From the NCBI RefSeq assembly GCF_006345805.1, contig NC_043006.1, forward strand, positions 310,001-374,000: a stretch of DNA of 64,000 nucleotides, given 5' to 3'. The position numbers were made by a program, and so were the translations under genes. The notes beneath the pieces are model-generated. The model did no database searches, was not told where the DNA came from, and was given only the letters and a program-made list of their open reading frames with translations. Positions 2,946 to 52,990 of the stretch are shown in pieces (position 1 is the stretch's first letter; each line of letters begins with the position of its first letter). This DNA comes from Octopus sinensis (taxonomy: Eukaryota).

Positions 2946-5900
2946 AAAATAGATACGTATGTTTGTGCATACACACACACACATATATATAATGTACTGA
3001 TCCATGATAGAAAATTCAACAAAACAAGCACTCCATCTGGTGAGAGATATTATTTATTAAAAGGTCACAATGTATATCAGAAGTCAAGTTCATTCATCCT
3101 AACAGTTTCATATTTTTCTATAATTTTTTCACTTCTTTGTTAATTTGTGAATTCTTGGTCTCCAGTCATTGAGTCTTCCTCATAAAGTAGCAATTCAGCT
3201 TTTGGGGTATCTTTTATTCCTTATTTTTCAAAAATCATTTTTGCTCTTTTGGTCATGGTTGTATCATCTTCACCACCATCGTTTAACGTCCGCTTTCCAT
3301 ACTGGTATGGGTTAGACTGAAGACTTTGGCAAGCCGGAAGGCTGCACTTGGCTCTAATCTGATTTGACTAGGTTTCTATAGCTGGATGCTCTCCCTAATG
3401 CCAACCACTCCGAAAGTGTAGTGGGTGCTTTTTATGTGCCACCAGCACAGGTGCCAGCCAGGTGGTACTGGCATTGTGTATGAATTCCCCAAAGGAAAAC
3501 TGATGCAGCATTCATTTGTAATGCAGGCTTTTTCCTCAGATCGTGTCTTTGATCAAGCTGTAGTCTTGAATTAAGTGTAGGCAGGGCACATAACATCTGA
3601 AGTCATCATTGTTACCATGTTGTTATGGATTAGACAGTTTAACAGGATCTGTGATAGGTCCAAGACTAGAGCAACAGTTTCTTTTTGTAACCGAGATTTG
3701 CTCAATTGACCAAGACTTATGGTGTATTTGCTGTGCTCAGGAAGACCCTTCAAGCTAAGTGAAATCATAGTTATGGCCACTTCTGGTGACATGCGAAAGG
3801 CACCTGTATTGATGAATTGTAAAAAAAAAAAACTCAGTACACTGTGTGGAGTGGTTGGCATTAGGAAGGGCATCCAGCCATAGAAGCCAAACTAAAACAG
3901 ACTGGAGCTTGTGCAGTTTTCTGGTTTCCATATATAGACACAAACATGACTTTATGGTTAAGAAGTTTGCTTCAACATTATCATCATCATCATCATCTAA
4001 TCTCTGTTCTCCATGCAGTCATGGGTTGGACAGTTTGACCAGGACTGGCAAGTTGGAAGGCTGCACCAGACTCCAGTATGATTTGGTATGGTTTCTATGG
4101 CTGGATGCTCTTCTTAACATCAACCACTCTGAGAGTGTAATGAGTGCTTTTTACATTCCACCGGCACAGGTGCCGTTTGTGTAACATCAGTGTCTGCCAT
4201 GACTGCAGTTTTACTTGGCTCATGGAGGCAAACCTCTTAACCATAAACTGCAAACCATCTTACCCATGCCAGAATGGAAAACAGACACTTTTTAACTCCA
4301 TATATCTCCCCCACTGTTTTTATTTTCGGCTTTATGTCCTTTTCAGAAAACTTATTTTCACTAGCATCTCACCAAAGTTTGGACCTTTGGAGTCGCTTAT
4401 ACTTTGTACTTGGCATTCTTGCCTGTTACCGATTATTGACTTTTTCTTTGTCTAGGTGTTTCCGTCTGTAAAATAGTAATTTGAATATTCATTGTTAAGA
4501 GTGAAAACAAATCTTTTCTTGGCTGGAAATGAAGACAATTAACTGCAGTCACAGAAAATTCTATTGAAAGAATTTTTAATGAAAAAAAGAATATTTCTTA
4601 CAAGATACTGTTATAAATTAAGCATTTTCTTTAGAATCCGGTATATTGCTGTCTTGGTAATAAAGAGTAATGACTTAACCCTTCATTACTATATTTCTAT
4701 TGAAATCTGCTATTTTTCTCTCTATTAACTTAGAAAATAATGAAGAATTTACCAAAATAATTTTGTTTTTTTATTCTTTCTTTGCTGGTTTCTTAACTTG
4801 TCTAAATGATTTTAACTTCATATTGTATTTGAAGCCAGTTTGAGGAAGAAAAATTGTAACAATTCTTCTGACGAGATACTTGACAAGGAATATTTATTTA
4901 ATTTGTTTCATTGCCATCTGTATCTAGTTGCCGCTAATTAGAAATATTTAATTTCTCTCAATTTCAAAATGTTTACATGGTTTGACTCTAAACAAAAGTG
5001 CTTTGGGCCAGTTTCTTTGCCATAATTCTTCACAGCTAACATTGTGGAGACGATAAACAAGAAATGCTTGACCAAAAGTCTTTAATTTTCCAGCTCTAGT
5101 CCATTACATTCTAAGTTCATTTCTTACTAGAATTGGCTTTGTTTTTCATTCCATTCATCCTCATCATCACATGTACTGTTTTACATGCTTGCATGGGTCA
5201 GATGGAATTTGAGGCAGATTTTCTATGACTAAATGATCTCCTTATCACCTCCTTACACCTGTGTCGAAGCAAGCTAATATTTCCCTATAGATTGACAAAC
5301 TTTCATAGAATACTGGAAATGAATGACATTCTTTTATTAAAATAAGGAGACACAAACTCTCTCTCATTTATATAAATATATGTGTATGTGTGTATATATG
5401 TGTGTGTGTGTGTGTGTATGATGGGCTTCTTTTAGTTTCCATCTGCCAAAACCACACTCACAAAGCTTTGGTCAGCCTGGGGCTATAGTGGGAAACACTA
5501 TGCAGTAGGAATGAACTTACAATCCCATGGTTGGGCAACAAGCTGCCTTTAAACTACACAGACATGCCCGCATCTTCATTACTAGTAAATAAACATTGAT
5601 AAAACTTCTAGTTAATGTAAATTTCTATGAAGATATTGGCCCTGGATTGTTGGTTTGGTTTTGTTATTCTAAAAGAATTGGATCTGCATTTGAATTATTA
5701 ACCAGTCTGTTTTGTGAGAGTTTCTAACCTCTTCAGATCTCAATCCATCGAAGACGGAACCTGGTTCTTTGATACAATATTGCTCATTTCTAAAGTGTTC
5801 ATATCCCAATTAAAACTTTCCATCCTAATTTTAACATCAGCTGGAGATAGAAATAAATGTAAAAATAAATTAAGTTCCTCAAAATTCTCGTGTTGTGGTT

Positions 5901-8935: not shown

Positions 8936-8997
8936 AGTGGACAGAGACCAAAGTGGTCAGATATCTTCAAAGGAGTTACAAGATGCACTTTCTAATG
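8936..8997 (+). CDS. PDCD6: PDCD6/ALG-2 coding exon 2a (EF-hand 1 loop; (R)VDRDQSGQISSKELQDALSN(G))
   Basis: tttctag|A GTG GAC AGA...TCT AAT G|gtgagt; 62 nt, phase 2 in / phase 1 out; canonical EF loop DRDQSGQISSKE; splices in frame to exon 3. Confidence 0.95.
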
Positions 8998-19161: not shown

Positions 19162-19514
19162 TCGTAGAATTTATTTTCAAGTTACACAATTTAGACAATC
19201 AAAAATTAAGAGCAACAGAGAAGGGAATTGCCCCCTTTTTTATTTAGCCAGTGGACCCATATACCCTGTATATATATATATATATTAAACACAAACCTGC
19301 TTACACACGCATTGGCACATGGCCAGACAATTGTGCACACAAAAGCACACGAAGCACATTTTCATTAGTCTTTCCATAAATCACATCAATGCGTTTTCCT
19401 TTTTCTTGCATCAATCACCATCACTCCTATCTATCATGCATGTCTGTTTAGTATATATAGTTACTTAGTACCTACTTAATCTAGAACATCTCCTCCTCCC
19501 TGCTGTCTTCTCAG

Positions 19515-19576
19515 GATTGACACCAACCGCAGTGGCGATATCTCTGGTTTTGAGCTTCAGCGAGCACTCTCTAATG
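19515..19576 (+). CDS. PDCD6: PDCD6/ALG-2 alternative exon 2b (paralogue of exon 2a; (R)IDTNRSGDISGFELQRALSN(G))
   Basis: ctcctcctccctgctgtcttctcag|G ATT GAC ACC AAC...TCT AAT G|gtaagc; exactly 62 nt, same phases as 2a; 12/20 aa and 37/62 nt identical to 2a; EF loop DTNRSGDISGFE. Confidence 0.88.
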
Positions 19577-19766
19577 GTAAGCACTATTGCAATATTTATT
19601 AAGGACACTCAGTTCTTTGTTTTCTTCTTTCATTCTGATTCCCTGGGTAGTGTGGGTGGGGGGTTGCCGTTCCCATTGTTCACCCTCTTGCTAGTCGTTC
19701 ACTCCTCTTTATCACCATGCTACACACTGTCCCAGCATTTATTTATAGTAGTAGTAGTACATGTGT

Positions 19767-32236: not shown

Positions 32237-32281
32237 GTACATGGACACCTTTCAACCCAGAAACTGTACGATTGATGGTTG
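32237..32281 (+). CDS. PDCD6: PDCD6/ALG-2 coding exon 3 ((G)TWTPFNPETVRLMV(G))
   Basis: taccag|GT ACA TGG...GTT G|gtaagt; 45 nt; GTWTPFNP is the ALG-2 signature; too short for the ORF track. Confidence 0.95.
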
Positions 32282-33790: not shown

Positions 33791-34015
<225 letters not shown>

Positions 34016-34361: not shown

Positions 34362-34679
<318 letters not shown>

Positions 34680-35417
34680 TAACAATCCTATCTACTGTAG
34701 GCACAAGGCCTGAGATTTTTAGGGAGCCAGCTAGTAGATTACATCAACCCCAATACTCAACTGGTACTTATTTCATCGACCCTGGAAGGATGAAAGGCAA
34801 AGTCAACCTAGGTGGAATTTGAACTCAGAATGTAGAGATGGACGAAATTCTGCTAAGCATTTTGTCCAGCATGCTAATGATTTTGCAAGTTTGCTACCTT
34901 TTTAAAGAATTTACCTTTAATAATAATAGTAATGAGCTTAAAGTATACAGTGCTAAGGTGCACTACATTTCATTAGAAAAGGTTAAAACTGCAGAGAGAA
35001 ACCACAAATGGTCAAATGTAGGAAAGCAGCAAGGGAAGTGAGAAGTATTTGCACAACACAGAATAAAACAGAGACAGAAAAGTGGACCGTAAAAGAGCCA
35101 TAAAGAGGAATGAGTACATAGGCACATCAGAGTACAAGCACATCAGAATAGTGTTGGAAATTTTCGGGAAGCATGGACTTTTAAAAAATGCAGTGTTCTA
35201 ACAGCTAACAACCAATGTTGGTAGCTTAGTCTATGGTTTGACAATTCTAGGTGTATAAAAGTCATGGGTGCTCTGCTGTTTTTTTTTTACTTTCTAAGCA
35301 TGTCCACAAATGGTTGATATATTGAATTAAAAAAAAGATGGATAAAAGTTGTTCAAAATATCGTGCATAATCTTGTGGGCTTTTACCTAGTCAGTGGCTA
35401 AATATTGAAACTTTAGC

Positions 35418-38103: not shown

Positions 38104-38205
38104 ACTTTAACAAATGCCTTTCAAGTTCACGACAGAGATCGCGATGGTGTCATTCAGATTTCATACGAAGATTTTCTTGGACTTGTATTCAGTCTTCGTA
38201 CTTAG
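38104..38205 (+). CDS. PDCD6: PDCD6/ALG-2 last coding exon 6 (EF5; TLTNAFQVHDRDRDGVIQISYEDFLGLVFSLRT*)
   Basis: pyrimidine tract ttttctttttctttttcag|ACT TTA...ACT TAG; EF5 dimerisation motif with ISYE. Confidence 0.96.
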   Translation, partial: TLTNAFQVHDRDRDGVIQISYEDFLGLVFSLRT

Positions 38206-44144: not shown

Positions 44145-46122
44145 GTTAGTTAGTTAGTTAATTTGGCTCAAAAGCAAATAGCAAGGCCATGTAGGGGGAC
44201 ATGGAGTTAAGTACAGGGTGGTGTTCATGTAAAGAGTTCAGGCCACTTGAGGTCCAGGGAGGCTTTGAACAAAGCGGTCGTCGGCATCTTCACCATCTCG
44301 TCTGGCAGCTTGTTCCACGGATCCGCAACCCGGACGGAGAAAGCTCCTCTCCTTCGATTGAGATGAAATCGTCGCAGGTAGAGCTTTTCGGAATGACCCC
44401 GCAGCCGACGCTCCGGAGCAGGAGTAAAGAACAGCTCTTTCGAGAGGTTACACTTCCTGCTTATGATGTTGTGGGCGAGAATGAGATCACCACGGCGGCG
44501 GCGTTTTTCAAGAGAATAAAGGTCGAGCGTCCTTAGCCTTTCTTCGTAGGACAAATTTTTGAGACCATGAACCATGCGGGTAGCCAGCTTCTGGACTCTT
44601 TCGAGATGCTGTATGTCTTAGAGGAGATAAGGAGAAGAGGCTTGAATCCCATACTCCAATATGGGTCTCACCAGCGTGACATAGAGTGGTAGGAATATGG
44701 CTGCTGTGAGCATTCCGAATGACCGTCGAATCAAAAACAGAATTCCGCGCACTTTGTTGGCAGCATGGACGCACTGGGCCGAAGGCGAAAAGGAGGAATC
44801 CACCAAGATACCCAGGTCCTTTACCTGATCGGTCCTCTCCAGCAGCAGACGACCCGGCTCGAAATCAAGTTGAGTTGCAGGAGTAGAGCCGACAGGCAGA
44901 TGACAGCACTTTGACACGTTCAGACACAGGTCCCAATCGTTAGACCACTTCCAAATTTGGTGGAGGCATCGACGAAGATCCTCTATACTACCGCGAGGAG
45001 CGACCAGTTTGATATCGTCAGCAAATAGAAGGGTGTGTTGCGTGAGGTCGTCGGGCAAGTCATTTATGAAGACTAAGAACAACAAGGGCCCAAGCACTGA
45101 ACCTTGAGGCACACCACTGCTCACACTGGAGACGTCGGACCGCGAACCATTAACTTGAACTTGGAAGGAGCGATCTGAGAGGAAGGCACCAACCCATCGT
45201 ACAATCTCCGGATGGAAACTATATGCTTGAAGCTTGACAAGTAGTAGGCGGTGGTTTACCGAGTCAAAAGCTTTGGCAAAGTCCAATAAAACGATGCCAA
45301 CAGCATCACTATCATCGAGGATGCGCGTCACCAATTCTTCCATTACTAGTAAGTTGGTCAAGCATGATCTCTTCAGCACGAAGCCGTGTTGGGAATCAGA
45401 GATAGAGGCTGTGTTTAGGAGGTGGAGCATCATACTTTTCTTAAGGATGGTTTCGAACATCTTGCTGATTATTGATGTAAGGGAAACCGGTCGGTAGTTA
45501 AGCGGGTCTTCGCGGCTCCCTTTCTTGAAAATTGGGCAGATTATCGCTGTTCTCCAGTCTGCAGGTATAACACCCGTCGCCAATGACATATTGAATAGTC
45601 GTGTTAAGGGCTCGCAGATGATGGGAGCCAACGCTTTGATAACCCGTGGGTGTATGCCGTCAGGGCCGTGACCCTTGTTGACATCGAGGCCTTGAATAAC
45701 ACGTTTGACTTCGTCCCGCGTGATGACCAATCGAAGCATTGGAGGTACCGATCTATCAAATGGAGGGGGTTCACGACCATCATCTTGTTTGAAAATAGTT
45801 GAAAAAGCCTCGGCAAATAATTGACTCTGTGTTGATAAGGGTCCTCAATCGATACGCCTGTTGAGTCTACCAACGTTGCAATCTGGTTGTTCAAGCGGGA
45901 ATTCCGCCGGACATGGGCAAAGAAGGTTTTTGGATTGCTACTGGCATTTGCCGCGATTTTGTATTCATAACTGAAGCGTTCTTTCTTTTCAATTTTCACG
46001 GCTCGGTCTCTTTGAGTTTTGTACACCTCAAAAGCTGCAGTCGAATCCAGATTTTTGAATTCAGCCCAAGCAATATCTCTGAGTCAACGTTCTCGTTTAA
46101 CCTCCTTCGTCACCCAGGGCTT
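44145..46122 (-). mobile_element. 5'-truncated CR1/L2-type non-LTR retrotransposon (RT domain and 3' end)
   Basis: ORF 44618..45739 has GPDGI, YRPVSLTS, QHGF, DFAKAFD, GVPQGSVLGP and FADD motifs; continues in frame through one TAA into ORF 44225..44575; one frameshift near 45830; (TAAC)n 3' tail at 44145-44160. Confidence 0.93.
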
Positions 46123-51029: not shown

Positions 51030-52990
51030 ACATGAAATGATATGGCTTCAACTTAAGTGTTCAGCAGAGTTATGGGTCTGAAGTTCCCTATCTTGTCCCC
51101 CTTGCTCGGGTCCTTCCTGATCAACATCACCACCCCCGGCTCGCAGACTTGGGAATTCTCCCATTCTGCTGCCAATTGACGTAGACGCTGGCCAGCAGGT
51201 GCCCGAACAAGTCTGGCATAGTTTTGTAGAATTCATAAGGCAGACCATCAAGACCCAGCGACTTCTTCTCGGGGCATTCGCCCAGTACCTCGATTACCTC
51301 CTTGGCCGTGATTGGTCCTTCACAGCACTCAGCCTCTCGTGCCGAGAGACGTGGACCGTCAGACAGGAAGTCCCTAAGGGCCTCGCCATGATCCAGCACC
51401 CCACCACTCCCAAACAACTCGGCAAAGTGCTTGTGAATTGCCTCACACATCTCGTCCTGTCCATCGACCGAACTCCCATTGTCATCCACGAGAGACCTAA
51501 TTGTGGCATCATTGCCATGCTGGGTTTCTACCGTATGGTCCCATCCAGCAACATTAATTTTCTCATGGCCCAATGTGCGCACTTTAGTCCGAACTTTGCA
51601 CCCCTCATGTTTGGCTTTGAGGTGACGGTCCAAGGCCGTTCTCACTGCCAAAATGTGAGATGCAGAGCCTAACCTCAACGTCTCCTCTAGGTGCTTAACT
51701 AGTTGCCCTTCTATTCTGGCCCTATCTAGTCTTAGCTGATGGCTAAACTTAATGGACTCAAAACGAATGGCTCTCTTCAGAGCGAACCACCATCGGTTAT
51801 TAACCACGGTTGATGCCCTCTATACTAATTCCTCAATCCGGCTACAGTGTGCCTCACAAGCCAAAATAGACTTGTTCAGCTTCCAGTAGCCGGATCCTTT
51901 CTTAACTGTACTCTCTATGTACAGTTTACACTTAACCATTCTATGGTCAGTGTATGGTACTTGGACAAGCTGTGGACAGCTAAAACTAGACTTATCTCCA
52001 GTTCTTATCACTATTCTATCTAAATCGGATTTGAACCTTCTGTCGCCACTCATCCAGGTCCACTCTGGGACATTCGGATGGTCAAGTCTGTAACGATCTG
52101 CCAGCTGAAACCACTTGAGCAGATCCACGAGACGTGAGTTTACTTTCCTATAGATCGAGTCAACGCTATTGATGCACGCATCAACAATAGCATTATAGTC
52201 ACCTAAAACCACTAATGTCTTCGACGTCACGAGAAAGTTCTCTCGGCACCGATAAAAATCAGTTTGAAATCCTCTAGCACAAGGTGCATAGATCCCGATC
52301 AACCTGAAGGCCTTACTGCTGTATGTCACATCAAGGACGACCAGCCCACCTTCTGGATCTACATAGACTGTACTTGTCTGCAGAGCCAAGCCTTTTCGAA
52401 CCAGTACTACTACACCCACTCGCTCTCCGGTCCGGCTAGGAGACATGATTTTCTCATAGTCATTCAGGAGGGGCGAGAAGGCTTGTAGACTGTCCAGCTT
52501 GGTCTCTGTAGCAACCATCACATGCATATCGTGTGATCTGAGGTCGTCGAGGAAACAAGCGTGCTTCTACTTCGAGCTCAGACCACGCACATTCAAACAT
52601 CCAAGGTTAAGTGCAGTCATTTAAAACAAAAGAAAAGCAAGGGTTCTACTTACTCTTTGACTTTTCCTTTTATTGGTGATGCTGGGGCTGATCTCACCAC
52701 ACGTGAGGCAGTCCTTTCCTCCTGCTCCTTCAAATACCGCAGAAGGTCCGGAATGTTCGTGATGGTCCTCGGATGCCTACCCTTCATTTCATTATACAAT
52801 TTTTCTGGTATCCAGGCACATCTCCCTTCCGTGCCTTCAGGCTGCTGCAACAGCTCCACGGTGTGGTGCTTTTTTAAAATGTCCATAATATATTTATCCC
52901 TGGTATCAAACTTTACCAGGGTTTTTGTTCCGTCTTTGTTCTTTTTTTAGTTTCTCTTCTGGGACAGTGGAGCGGGATCTTTTTTTTTTC
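51030..52990 (-). mobile_element. L1/Tx1-clade LINE fragment (ORF1 remnant, APE endonuclease, start of RT), 3' part missing
   Basis: ORF 51820..52527 has ETKL, IYAP, GDYN, DRI, DHR and GYWKLN motifs; ORF 51127..51807 has KSLGLDGLPYEFY; NFRPITLLNT at about 51060-51090. Confidence 0.9.

What the first reader, a model, noticed from the sequence alone, without database searches (positions are those of the whole stretch)
19515..19576. Hidden second exon 2 of ALG-2/PDCD6: candidate mutually exclusive EF-hand 1 exons
Seen in the sequence: 10.5 kb after exon 2a there is another exon of exactly 62 nt with the same phases, a C-rich polypyrimidine tract, AG acceptor and G|GTAAGC donor. It encodes IDTNRSGDISGFELQRALSN versus VDRDQSGQISSKELQDALSN. 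The two are 60% identical in nt, 5 of the 12 conserved residues differ silently, and the EF-loop ligand positions (D1, D/N3, S5, G6, I8, S9, E12) are kept, a pattern that fits an old duplication under purifying selection. Including both exons shifts the frame to a TGA at 32273-32275, and skipping both also breaks the frame, so only one can be used. Established: EF1 and EF3 are the main Ca2+ sites of ALG-2, which links Ca2+ to ALIX/TSG101 (ESCRT) and Sec31A (COPII), and mammals have a single exon 2. Inference: this lineage switches the Ca2+ sensitivity or partner surface of ALG-2 by swapping the EF1 loop. I do not know of this being described.
Basis: partly seen in the sequence, partly recalled or inferred. 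Interest (0 to 1): 0.88.

Follow-up and report, generated by a model that had tools for sequence, protein, structure and literature searches.

The report
Alternative EF-hand-1 exon of octopus PDCD6
The second 62-base exon is real and is one of two either-or versions of the first calcium-binding loop of the trafficking protein ALG-2/PDCD6, but it is already annotated in octopus databases and is an ancient feature shared by molluscs, ribbon worms and bryozoans.

Summary
Observation confirmed. Window 19515-19576 (+) is a 62-nt exon with the same length and phase as exon 2a (8936-8997). It has a pyrimidine tract, an AG acceptor and a GTAAGC donor, and it encodes a complete EF-hand-1 loop plus exit helix. 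Including both exons gives a TGA at 32273-32275; skipping both gives a TGA at 33859-33861.

It is not hidden. The exact peptide is in RefSeq XP_029641531.1 (PDCD6 isoform X2, Octopus sinensis) and CAI9728516.1 (O. vulgaris). O. bimaculoides X2 differs by one residue.

It is not lineage-specific. The layout exon 1, a-type, b-type, exon 3 (both 62 nt, same phase, same order) is in a chiton, a nemertean and a bryozoan genome. Same-length a/b isoform pairs are annotated in gastropods, oysters and a brachiopod. A barnacle has an analogous tandem pair. Spliced b-type mRNA contigs exist in a second cephalopod-like species.

The a and b types keep type-specific residues across phyla: V/I35, K/R vs mostly T at 37, Q/H vs S/D/T/E at 42, R50 in b (human numbering). 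Calcium ligands and the Sec31A-pocket core are invariant. The variable positions overlap the membrane-binding patch of human ALG-2. Any functional difference is untested.

I found no paper describing this. Interest is modest.

The parts
8936..8997 (+). PDCD6 exon 2a (a-type EF1 cassette, VDRDQSGQISSKELQDALSN). 62 nt, made of 1 nt + 20 codons + 1 nt. Acceptor ttctAG, donor GTGAGT.
   Evidence: Identical in O. bimaculoides. Matches RefSeq isoform X1, P0121.
19490..19514 (+). C/T-rich polypyrimidine tract and AG acceptor (19513-19514) of exon 2b.
   Evidence: 47/50 upstream bases are conserved in O. bimaculoides.
19515..19576 (+). PDCD6 exon 2b (b-type EF1 cassette, IDTNRSGDISGFELQRALSN). 62 nt, same phase as 2a.
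   Evidence: Letter-for-letter in XP_029641531.1 / CAI9728516.1, P0122. Orthologous b-type exons are present in L001, L008, L009 and L010.
19577..19582 (+). Donor GTAAGC of exon 2b (U2-type).
32237..32281 (+). Exon 3 (45 nt, G-TWTPFNPETVRLMV-G), shared by both isoforms.
32273..32275 (+). TGA reached if 2a and 2b are both included. It lies 275 mRNA nt upstream of the last exon junction.
33852..34010 (+). Exon 4 (EF2-EF3). It contains the TGA at 33859-33861 that is reached if both exon 2 versions are skipped.
34489..34598 (+). Exon 5 (EF4).
38104..38205 (+). Coding part of exon 6 (EF5), including the stop TAG at 38203-38205.

Best explanation
Window 19515-19576 is exon 2b of the octopus PDCD6 (ALG-2) gene. 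It is one of two tandem-duplicated, mutually exclusive exons that each encode the whole EF-hand-1 Ca2+ loop and its exit helix (human residues 35-54).

Shown here:
- The two exons have equal length and phase, and good U2-type splice sites.
- Using both, or neither, breaks the frame.
- Public annotation carries two 177-aa isoforms that differ only in this cassette.
- The a-then-b arrangement is conserved in Mollusca, Nemertea and Bryozoa, so the duplication is at least as old as the lophotrochozoan ancestor.

Inferred:
- Exclusivity in octopus is enforced by the reading frame. Double-inclusion or double-skipping products carry an early stop and are lost, or give a useless fragment. Splicing regulators choose between the exons.
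- Both cassettes bind Ca2+, because ligand positions 1, 3, 5, 9 and 12 and Gly6 are kept.
- Both keep the Sec31A-binding Pocket 3 core (L48, A51, L52, S53).
- The swap re-tunes eight surface or near-surface positions (35, 37, 38, 39, 42, 45, 46, 50). Two of these, 37 and 39, belong to the R34/K37/R39 basic patch that drives Ca2+-dependent binding of human ALG-2 to acidic membranes. Position 35 lines Pocket 3.
- The most likely effect is therefore a shift in EF1 Ca2+ affinity or kinetics, and in membrane and ER-exit-site engagement, rather than in ALIX/ESCRT binding, which uses Pockets 1 and 2.
For: Anatomy and frame logic.

Annotated isoforms:
- P0121 (X1, 2a) and P0122 (X2, 2b) for O. sinensis and O. 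vulgaris.
- P0001 and P0123 for O. bimaculoides.

Selection:
- 2b differs at 2/62 nt between the two octopuses, one Ser-to-Thr change and one silent change.
- Against a decapodiform-like cephalopod, pN/pS is 0.24/0.78 for 2b and 0.14/0.60 for 2a.

Spliced b-type mRNA: contigs L002 and L003 from two sequencing runs, against a-type contigs L004-L007.

Same order, length and phase: Liolophura, Tubulanus and Watersipora genomes.

Type-specific residues across 11 taxa: same-type identity is 14.07/20 and cross-type identity 12.35/20. The observed labelling is the best of 1024 label swaps.

Family and fold:
- PEF identity: PDB ALG-2 E 4e-74, Pfam EF-hand hits for both isoforms.
- AF2 model of the 2b isoform: helix-loop-helix at residues 10-37; best Foldseek hits are ALG-2 structures.

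Residue roles in human ALG-2: Pocket 3 list (PMC4346919); RKR patch and W57 (PMC10907313).
Against: - I could not see octopus RNA reads. The O. bimaculoides X2 was found only in the genome record. RefSeq X2 models could in principle rest on weak evidence.
- The functional reading is borrowed from human ALG-2.
- In octopus itself both cassettes carry two of the three basic-patch residues (a: K34, R37, Q39; b: K34, T37, R39). A membrane-binding difference is therefore less obvious here than in taxa where a is VDKDR and b is IDTDR.
- In several taxa the a/b labels were assigned by the V/I at position 35, which is slightly circular. Genomic order is known for only four lophotrochozoan taxa plus the barnacle.
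- No splicing regulator or RNA structure was identified.
Confidence: 0.9

Rival explanations
1. Exon 2b is a dead or nearly unused relic of an exon duplication. The X2 isoform would then be a product of automatic gene prediction rather than a real mRNA.
For: No octopus transcript carrying 2b could be retrieved here. The a-type mRNA is far more common in assemblies of the related cephalopod: 72 contigs against 2.
Against: - The open frame, both splice sites, the EF-loop ligands and the type-specific residues are kept across phyla.
- pN is well below pS.
- Full-length spliced b-type mRNA contigs come from two independent runs in another cephalopod-like species.
- Isoform pairs are annotated independently in more than 15 species.
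Confidence: 0.04
2. The a/b pairs arose by independent duplications of the EF1 exon in each lineage, with convergent sequence. They would not come from one ancient duplication.
For: - Duplication of this exon clearly recurs. The barnacle has two tandem 107-nt exons, each a fused exon 2+3.
- A planthopper has a pair whose members resemble each other.
- Lineus has three variants.
- Other PDCD6 exons (EF4, EF5) also exist as alternative sets in bivalves, amphioxus, Lineus and Amphiura.
Against: - Exon size, phase and a-before-b order are identical in octopus, chiton, nemertean and bryozoan.
- Octopus 2b is closer to the nemertean b exon (16/20) than to its own 2a (12/20). Octopus 2a is closer to the chiton a exon (17/20).
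- The observed labelling is the best of 1024 label swaps.
Confidence: 0.08
3. Mutual exclusion is enforced by competing intronic RNA pairings (docking and selector sites) or by steric or spliceosome incompatibility, and the reading frame plays no part.
For: In the bryozoan Watersipora the intron between a and b is only 52 nt. That is compatible with steric exclusion there.
Against: - In octopus the a-b intron is 10.5 kb, so steric hindrance is excluded.
- All splice sites are GT-AG with U2-type consensus.
- The best duplexes between the 250-nt exon flanks are no stronger than shuffled controls, |z| < 1.5. That is a weak test, limited to 250 nt.
Confidence: 0.1

Closest known systems
Human/mouse ALG-2 splice isoform ALG-2(deltaGF122)
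   Same: The same gene yields two isoforms by alternative splicing. They are reported to differ in Ca2+ affinity and target recognition (title of Tarabykina et al. 2000, cited; PMC2927601, listed).
   Different: The mammalian isoform lacks two residues (Gly121, Phe122) at Pocket 2 and loses ALIX binding (PMC4346919). The octopus event swaps a whole 20-residue EF1 cassette through mutually exclusive exons and leaves Pockets 1 and 2 untouched.
Mutually exclusive exons from tandem exon duplication (general class; e.g. OGDH exons 4a/4b, where 4b encodes a Ca2+-sensing DADLD site)
   Same: Adjacent homologous exons of equal length, of which one is used per mRNA. In OGDH the swap toggles a Ca2+-binding motif resembling the start of an EF-hand loop (PMC9177970).
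   Different: Here both cassettes keep a complete canonical EF loop, so the swap tunes a site rather than adding or removing one. The gene and pathway differ (ESCRT/COPII adaptor, not a mitochondrial enzyme).
CaV2 channel exons 37a/37b (EF-hand-like region of the C-terminus)
   Same: Mutually exclusive exons that replace part of an EF-hand helix and change regulation. Basis: my own knowledge, plus PMC5818475 listed; I did not read that paper.
   Different: That is a channel regulatory domain, not a soluble penta-EF-hand sensor. It is unrelated in sequence.
RefSeq/UniProt PDCD6 isoform X2 of Octopus sinensis, O. vulgaris and O. bimaculoides
   Same: This is the same molecule. XP_029641531.1 / CAI9728516.1 contain the window's 2b peptide exactly. 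XP_014773298.1 differs by S29T.
   Different: No difference in sequence. The database entries carry no comment on mutual exclusivity, age or function.

Membership tests
PDCD6 / ALG-2 (penta-EF-hand family) | Full-length sequence similarity to ALG-2 and a five-EF-hand fold | tested here: met
   Human ALG-2 structures match at E 4e-74 over residues 8-175. Pfam EF-hand families hit both isoforms. For the AF2 model of the 2b isoform, the best Foldseek hits are 2zn9, 5jjg and 2zne at 62-64% identity and TM 0.70-0.75.
PDCD6 / ALG-2 (penta-EF-hand family) | Canonical 12-residue EF1 loop with ligands at positions 1, 3, 5, 9, 12 and Gly at 6 | tested here: met
   2a is DRDQSGQISSKE and 2b is DTNRSGDISGFE. 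Both fit the PROSITE EF-hand loop pattern (recalled from memory, run as a regular expression). Asn at position 3 is a standard ligand.
PDCD6 / ALG-2 (penta-EF-hand family) | Conserved Pocket 3 (Sec31A site) residues encoded by exon 2: L48, A51, L52, S53 (human numbering) | tested here: met
   L33, A36 and L37 are invariant in all 38 aligned sequences. S38 (human S53) is present in both octopus cassettes and in 25 of 28 cassettes compared. The residue list comes from PMC4346919.
PDCD6 / ALG-2 (penta-EF-hand family) | Ca2+-dependent binding to ALIX, TSG101, Sec31A and acidic membranes | not testable with these tools
   Needs recombinant protein.
Mutually exclusive exons from tandem exon duplication | Neighbouring homologous exons of the same length and phase, each with its own splice sites | tested here: met
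   62 nt each, phase 1+20 codons+1, AG and GT sites, 12/20 aa identical.
Mutually exclusive exons from tandem exon duplication | Mature mRNAs carry exactly one of the two | tested here: inconclusive
   Annotated isoforms X1 and X2 carry one each. Spliced contigs from a related cephalopod carry a or b. Reads for octopus, and the absence of double-inclusion mRNAs, could not be examined.
Mutually exclusive exons from tandem exon duplication | Double inclusion or double skipping is non-productive | tested here: met
   TGA at 32273-32275 when both are included. TGA at 33859-33861 when neither is.
Mutually exclusive exons from tandem exon duplication | Both copies conserved in other species | tested here: met
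   Genomic a/b pairs in L001, L008, L009 and L010. Isoform pairs in gastropods, oysters, nemerteans, a bryozoan and a brachiopod.
MXE selection by competing RNA structures (docking/selector) | Intronic element able to pair alternatively with a sequence next to each variant exon | tested here: inconclusive
   RNAduplex of the 250-nt flanks of exons 2a, 2b and 3 gave no duplex stronger than shuffles, z from -0.9 to +1.5. Only a small part of 23 kb of intron was tested, and no distant genome was available for covariation.
MXE by steric hindrance or U2/U12 incompatibility | Intron between the variants too short to splice, or one U12-type and one U2-type intron | tested here: not met
   The intron is 10,517 nt in octopus. 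All donors are GTRAGY-like and all acceptors are Y-tract+AG. It is 52 nt in Watersipora, where steric exclusion is possible.

The most novel reading that the evidence does not exclude
The EF1 a/b exon switch is a regulatory device more than 500 million years old, kept across Lophotrochozoa and possibly all protostomes. It would split ALG-2 into two sensors.

- The a form keeps the full basic membrane-binding patch (K/R37). It would be tuned for direct, Ca2+-triggered binding to acidic membranes and ER exit sites.
- The b form (T37, acidic or polar 42, R50, I35) would have altered Ca2+ affinity, weaker or relocated membrane contact, and a modified Pocket 3.

On this reading vertebrates lost the switch and rely on one cassette. 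The same gene has repeatedly evolved alternative EF4 and EF5 exons in other phyla, which would make PDCD6 a hotspot for cassette-wise tuning of a Ca2+ sensor. I found no publication on either point.
Probability: 0.25. Interest if true: 0.6.

Novelty: already known. Interest (0 to 1): 0.35.

Why it matters
ALG-2 is the Ca2+ sensor that brings ESCRT proteins to damaged membranes and regulates COPII at ER exit sites. A natural, anciently conserved pair of EF1 cassettes is a ready-made experiment on what EF1 contributes. The variable positions fall on the loop residues that human studies link to acidic-membrane binding (K37, R39) and on the rim of the Sec31A pocket (V35). The Ca2+ ligands and the pocket core stay fixed.

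For genome annotation the practical message is smaller. The exon is real and already modelled. The comparative pattern is not in the literature I could search. That pattern is the same a/b order in four phyla, plus further alternative EF4 and EF5 exons elsewhere. It could be written up from public data.

Tried and rejected
- Looked for exon 1 in the window by composition and by motif. It is absent; it lies 3.1 kb upstream of the window.
- Exact-sequence lookup of the O. sinensis 2b isoform in assemblies and transcript contigs found nothing. The O. bimaculoides 2b isoform was found only in its genome.
- Logan contig L017, an O. bimaculoides-type mRNA fragment, has unrelated 5' sequence joined inside exon 3. 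It says nothing about exon 2.
- A homology search restricted to residues 17-56 did not separate a-type from b-type proteins, because the invariant exon 3 part dominates the score. I classified them by reading the sequences instead.
- A third EF1 variant exon in the octopus introns, as in Lineus: none.
- Intronic RNA pairing between exon flanks: nothing above shuffled controls. A first attempt with 400-nt flanks timed out.
- Lookups of the oyster X2, barnacle X2 and Lineus X3 loci: not on record.
- Literature searches for PDCD6/ALG-2/penta-EF-hand with mutually exclusive exons, for octopus MXEs, for mollusc ALG-2 isoforms and for the SRA run numbers found no description. One search failed on term length.
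- The species behind L002-L007 could not be named. I call it 'decapodiform-like cephalopod' by inference, from 77-79% protein identity to octopus and cephalopod-specific C-terminal residues.

Full report
**What is in the sequence**

The window carries exons 2 to 6 of a PDCD6/ALG-2 gene on the + strand.

| Exon | Coordinates | Length |
|---|---|---|
| 2a | 8936-8997 | 62 nt |
| 2b | 19515-19576 | 62 nt |
| 3 | 32237-32281 | 45 nt |
| 4 | 33852-34010 | 159 nt |
| 5 | 34489-34598 | 110 nt |
| 6 (coding) | 38104-38205 | stop TAG at 38203-38205 |

Exon 1 is not in the window. The whole-genome search places it at G000:C10:306827-306886, about 3.1 kb upstream of the window start. The window is C10:310001-374000 of a 2.72-Gb, 13,516-contig assembly.

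- Exon 2b has a C/T-rich tract, an AG acceptor and a G|GTAAGC donor.
- The two exons share 37/62 nt and 12/20 residues. Five of the shared residues use different codons.
- Including both exons gives a TGA at 32273-32275, 275 mRNA nt before the last exon junction.
- Skipping both gives a TGA at 33859-33861.
- A strict EF1-type peptide pattern occurs only at these two sites on either strand of the 64 kb, and there is no third variant.

**The exon is already annotated**

A search with the exon 2b to exon 6 protein found 'programmed cell death protein 6 isoform X1 [Octopus bimaculoides]' at 94% identity. Its 90% cluster holds six members:

| Protein | Accessions | Species | Cassette |
|---|---|---|---|
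| P0121 | XP_029641530.1 / CAI9728515.1 | O. sinensis / O. vulgaris, X1 | 2a |
| P0122 | XP_029641531.1 / CAI9728516.1 | O. sinensis / O. vulgaris, X2 | KIDTNRSGDISGFELQRALSNG, exactly the window's 2b |
| P0123 | XP_014773298.1 (UniProt A0A0L8HD89) | O. bimaculoides, X2 | IDTNRSGDITGFELQRALSN |

Both isoforms are 177 aa and differ only in this cassette. The exon is therefore not hidden. The window's protein matches the O. sinensis/vulgaris entries.

**Conservation between octopuses**

The O. bimaculoides locus (L001) is collinear with the window at about 85-92% identity through the introns.
- Exon 2a is identical between the species.
- Exon 2b differs at 2 of 62 nt: TCT to ACT (Ser to Thr) and a silent CTC to CTA.
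- The splice sites are intact. The 300-nt flanks of 2b are 85% and 70% identical.

The two species are too close for this alone to prove selection.

**A second cephalopod and mRNA evidence**

One cluster of transcript-sized Logan contigs (about 1-1.8 kb) is 77-79% identical to the octopus protein. It holds two forms:
- an a-type form, RVDKDRSGQVTAKELQDALSN (P0248, 72 contigs);
- a b-type form, RIDVNRSGELCTSELQRALSN (P0250).

The b-type form sits in two contigs from two runs: L002 (SRR24189504, 1316 nt) and L003 (SRR24189497, 1123 nt). Each carries an uninterrupted 188-aa reading frame with untranslated ends, so each is a spliced mRNA. I could not name the species. 'Decapodiform-like cephalopod' is my inference.

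Against octopus, synonymous sites are near saturation while non-synonymous change is low:

| Exon | pS | pN |
|---|---|---|
| 2a | 0.60 | 0.14 |
| 2b | 0.78 | 0.24 |

Both cassettes are under purifying selection.

**The pair is far older than cephalopods**

Equal-length isoform pairs that differ only in this cassette are annotated in many taxa:
- the chiton Liolophura;
- four Haliotis species, Gigantopelta, Littorina and Biomphalaria;
- oysters (Crassostrea, Saccostrea);
- the nemerteans Tubulanus and Lineus (three variants in Lineus);
- the bryozoan Watersipora;
- the brachiopod Lingula.

I fetched three genomic loci and located the exons. In each the order is exon 1, a, b, exon 3. Both variants are 62 nt with the same 1+60+1 phase and AG/GT sites.

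| Taxon | Locus | Exon a | Exon b |
|---|---|---|---|
| Liolophura (chiton) | L008 | 2033-2094 | 2651-2712 |
| Tubulanus (nemertean) | L009 | 3042-3103 | 3723-3784 |
| Watersipora (bryozoan) | L010 | 1285-1346 | 1399-1460 |

Across 11 taxa, same-type cassettes of different species share 14.07/20 residues and cross-type cassettes 12.35/20. Of 1024 ways of swapping the labels within species, none beats the observed one. Octopus 2b shares 16/20 residues with the nemertean b exons but only 12/20 with its own 2a. Octopus 2a shares 17/20 with the chiton a exon.

One caveat applies. Where genomic order was unknown I labelled by V or I at the first position, which accounts for one of the 20 columns.

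The simplest reading is a single duplication no later than the common ancestor of molluscs, nemerteans and bryozoans. Placing that ancestor in the Cambrian or earlier rests on general knowledge and was not tested here.

**A possible deeper origin, unresolved**

The barnacle Amphibalanus has two tandem 107-nt exons, each equal to exons 2+3 fused. The a-like copy (VDKDRSGHISSVELASALSN) comes first and the b-like copy (VDTDRSGTISAHELQRALSN) second. Each shares 17/20 residues with the Littorina a or b cassette. That suggests either a protostome-wide origin followed by rearrangement, or convergence. A planthopper pair looks like a recent independent duplication.

**How exclusivity is achieved**

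- In octopus the a-b intron is 10.5 kb, so steric hindrance is excluded.
- All sites are U2-type GT-AG.
- The best RNA duplexes between the 250-nt exon flanks are no better than shuffles. This is a weak test.

What the sequence does show is frame incompatibility: 62+62 nt, or 0 nt, both lead to early stops. I therefore take the reading frame (with decay of mis-spliced mRNAs, inferred) as the fail-safe, with unknown splicing factors making the choice. In Watersipora the a-b intron is only 52 nt, so steric exclusion is plausible there.

**What the swap changes**

Octopus residue n corresponds to human residue n+15. The cassette therefore covers human residues 35-54: the EF1 loop (36-47) and the exit helix.

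Invariant in all cassettes examined are D36, S40, E47, L48, A51, L52 and N54, with G41, I43 and S53 nearly so. Both octopus loops fit the EF-hand loop pattern. Both isoforms score as EF-hand proteins. An AF2 model of the 2b isoform (mean pLDDT 75) shows helix 10-20, a loop, then helix 30-37, and best matches ALG-2 crystal structures.

The a/b differences lie at positions 35, 37, 38, 39, 42, 45, 46 and 50. Across 14 a and 14 b cassettes the stable signatures are:

| Human position | a-type | b-type |
|---|---|---|
| 35 | V, 14/14 | I, 12/14 |
| 37 | K/R, 13/14 | T, 8/14 |
| 42 | Q/H, 11/14 | S/D/T/E, 12/14 |
| 46 | K, 6/14 | never basic |
| 50 | never R | R, 7/14 |

In human ALG-2, V35, L48, A51, L52 and S53 help form Pocket 3, which binds the Sec31A PXPGF motif. 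[quoted passage not shown] R34, K37 and R39 in EF1, together with W57, drive Ca2+-dependent binding to acidic membranes and recruitment to ER exit sites, but not to lysosomes (PMC10907313).

My inference is that the swap leaves Ca2+ ligation and the pocket core intact. It re-tunes loop non-ligand positions (Ca2+ affinity or kinetics), the membrane-facing charge pattern, and the pocket rim. In octopus itself the basic-patch count is equal: K34, R37, Q39 in a against K34, T37, R39 in b. The membrane part of this idea is therefore weaker here than in taxa with VDKDR against IDTDR. None of this is tested.

**Literature**

Six searches of the paper library found nothing on alternative or mutually exclusive EF1 exons of PDCD6/ALG-2 in any invertebrate. 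The only ALG-2 splice isoform these searches turned up is the mammalian deltaGF122 form (PMC2927601; PMC4346919).

**Verdict**

- The interpretation as mutually exclusive EF1 exons is supported.
- The claims of being hidden and lineage-specific are wrong.
- The feature is an ordinary, already annotated member of a well-known class.
- The deep conservation and the overlap with the recently defined membrane-binding patch are a modestly interesting, apparently unpublished lead.

Noticed in passing
G000:C10:565258-565448 (L013 1422-1612), minus strand, about 221 kb downstream of the gene: A 193-bp copy, 96% identical, of PDCD6 exon 5 plus the first 82 nt of intron 5 (window 34488-34680). The acceptor side is not copied, so it looks like an isolated duplicated fragment.
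   Followed up: partly
window 44618-45739 (-) and 51820-52527 (-): Retroelement remnants downstream of PDCD6. One is a 373-aa ORF with a reverse-transcriptase domain (RVT_1, E 4e-33). The other is a 235-aa ORF with an endonuclease/exonuclease/phosphatase match just under the Pfam cut-off.
   Followed up: partly
G000:C23:20862397-20874832 (+), L015: A penta-EF-hand paralogue. Its EF1 region ([45 protein letters not shown]) lies in a single exon, with no intron at the exon 2/3 position.
   Followed up: no
proteins P0039/P0221/P0223, P0042/P0224/P0225, P0026/P0226/P0003, P0053/P0236, P0235/P0247: In bivalves (Ruditapes, Mercenaria, Mya) and amphioxus, PDCD6 has equal-length isoforms that differ in the exon 5 (EF4) cassette. 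A 237-aa Mya 'low quality' model contains two copies in a row.
   Followed up: no
proteins P0228 vs P0230 (Lineus), P0050/P0233 (Amphiura), P0033 (Lingula), P0083/P0259 (Hydractinia): Equal-length isoforms that differ in the last exon (EF5, the dimerisation hand). PDCD6 seems to have acquired alternative cassettes repeatedly in different phyla.
   Followed up: no
L018 1863-1969 and 2095-2201 (Amphibalanus amphitrite): The barnacle has two tandem 107-nt exons, each a fused exon 2+3. The a-like and b-like copies share 17/20 residues with the Littorina a and b cassettes. Either the origin is older, with rearrangement, or this is convergence.
   Followed up: partly
L010 1347-1398 (Watersipora subatra): The intron between the a and b exons is only 52 nt. 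In this bryozoan, mutual exclusion could be steric.
   Followed up: no
L017 1-215 (Logan SRR16213285 contig): An O. bimaculoides-type PDCD6 mRNA fragment in which unrelated sequence is joined inside exon 3. It is either a chimeric assembly or an unusual 5' end.
   Followed up: no
proteins P0127 and P0195 (Ridgeia piscesae): Two PDCD6-like gene models carry consecutive locus tags (NP493_10g05037 and NP493_10g05038) on one contig of the same length. This tubeworm may have a tandem gene duplicate rather than alternative exons.
   Followed up: no
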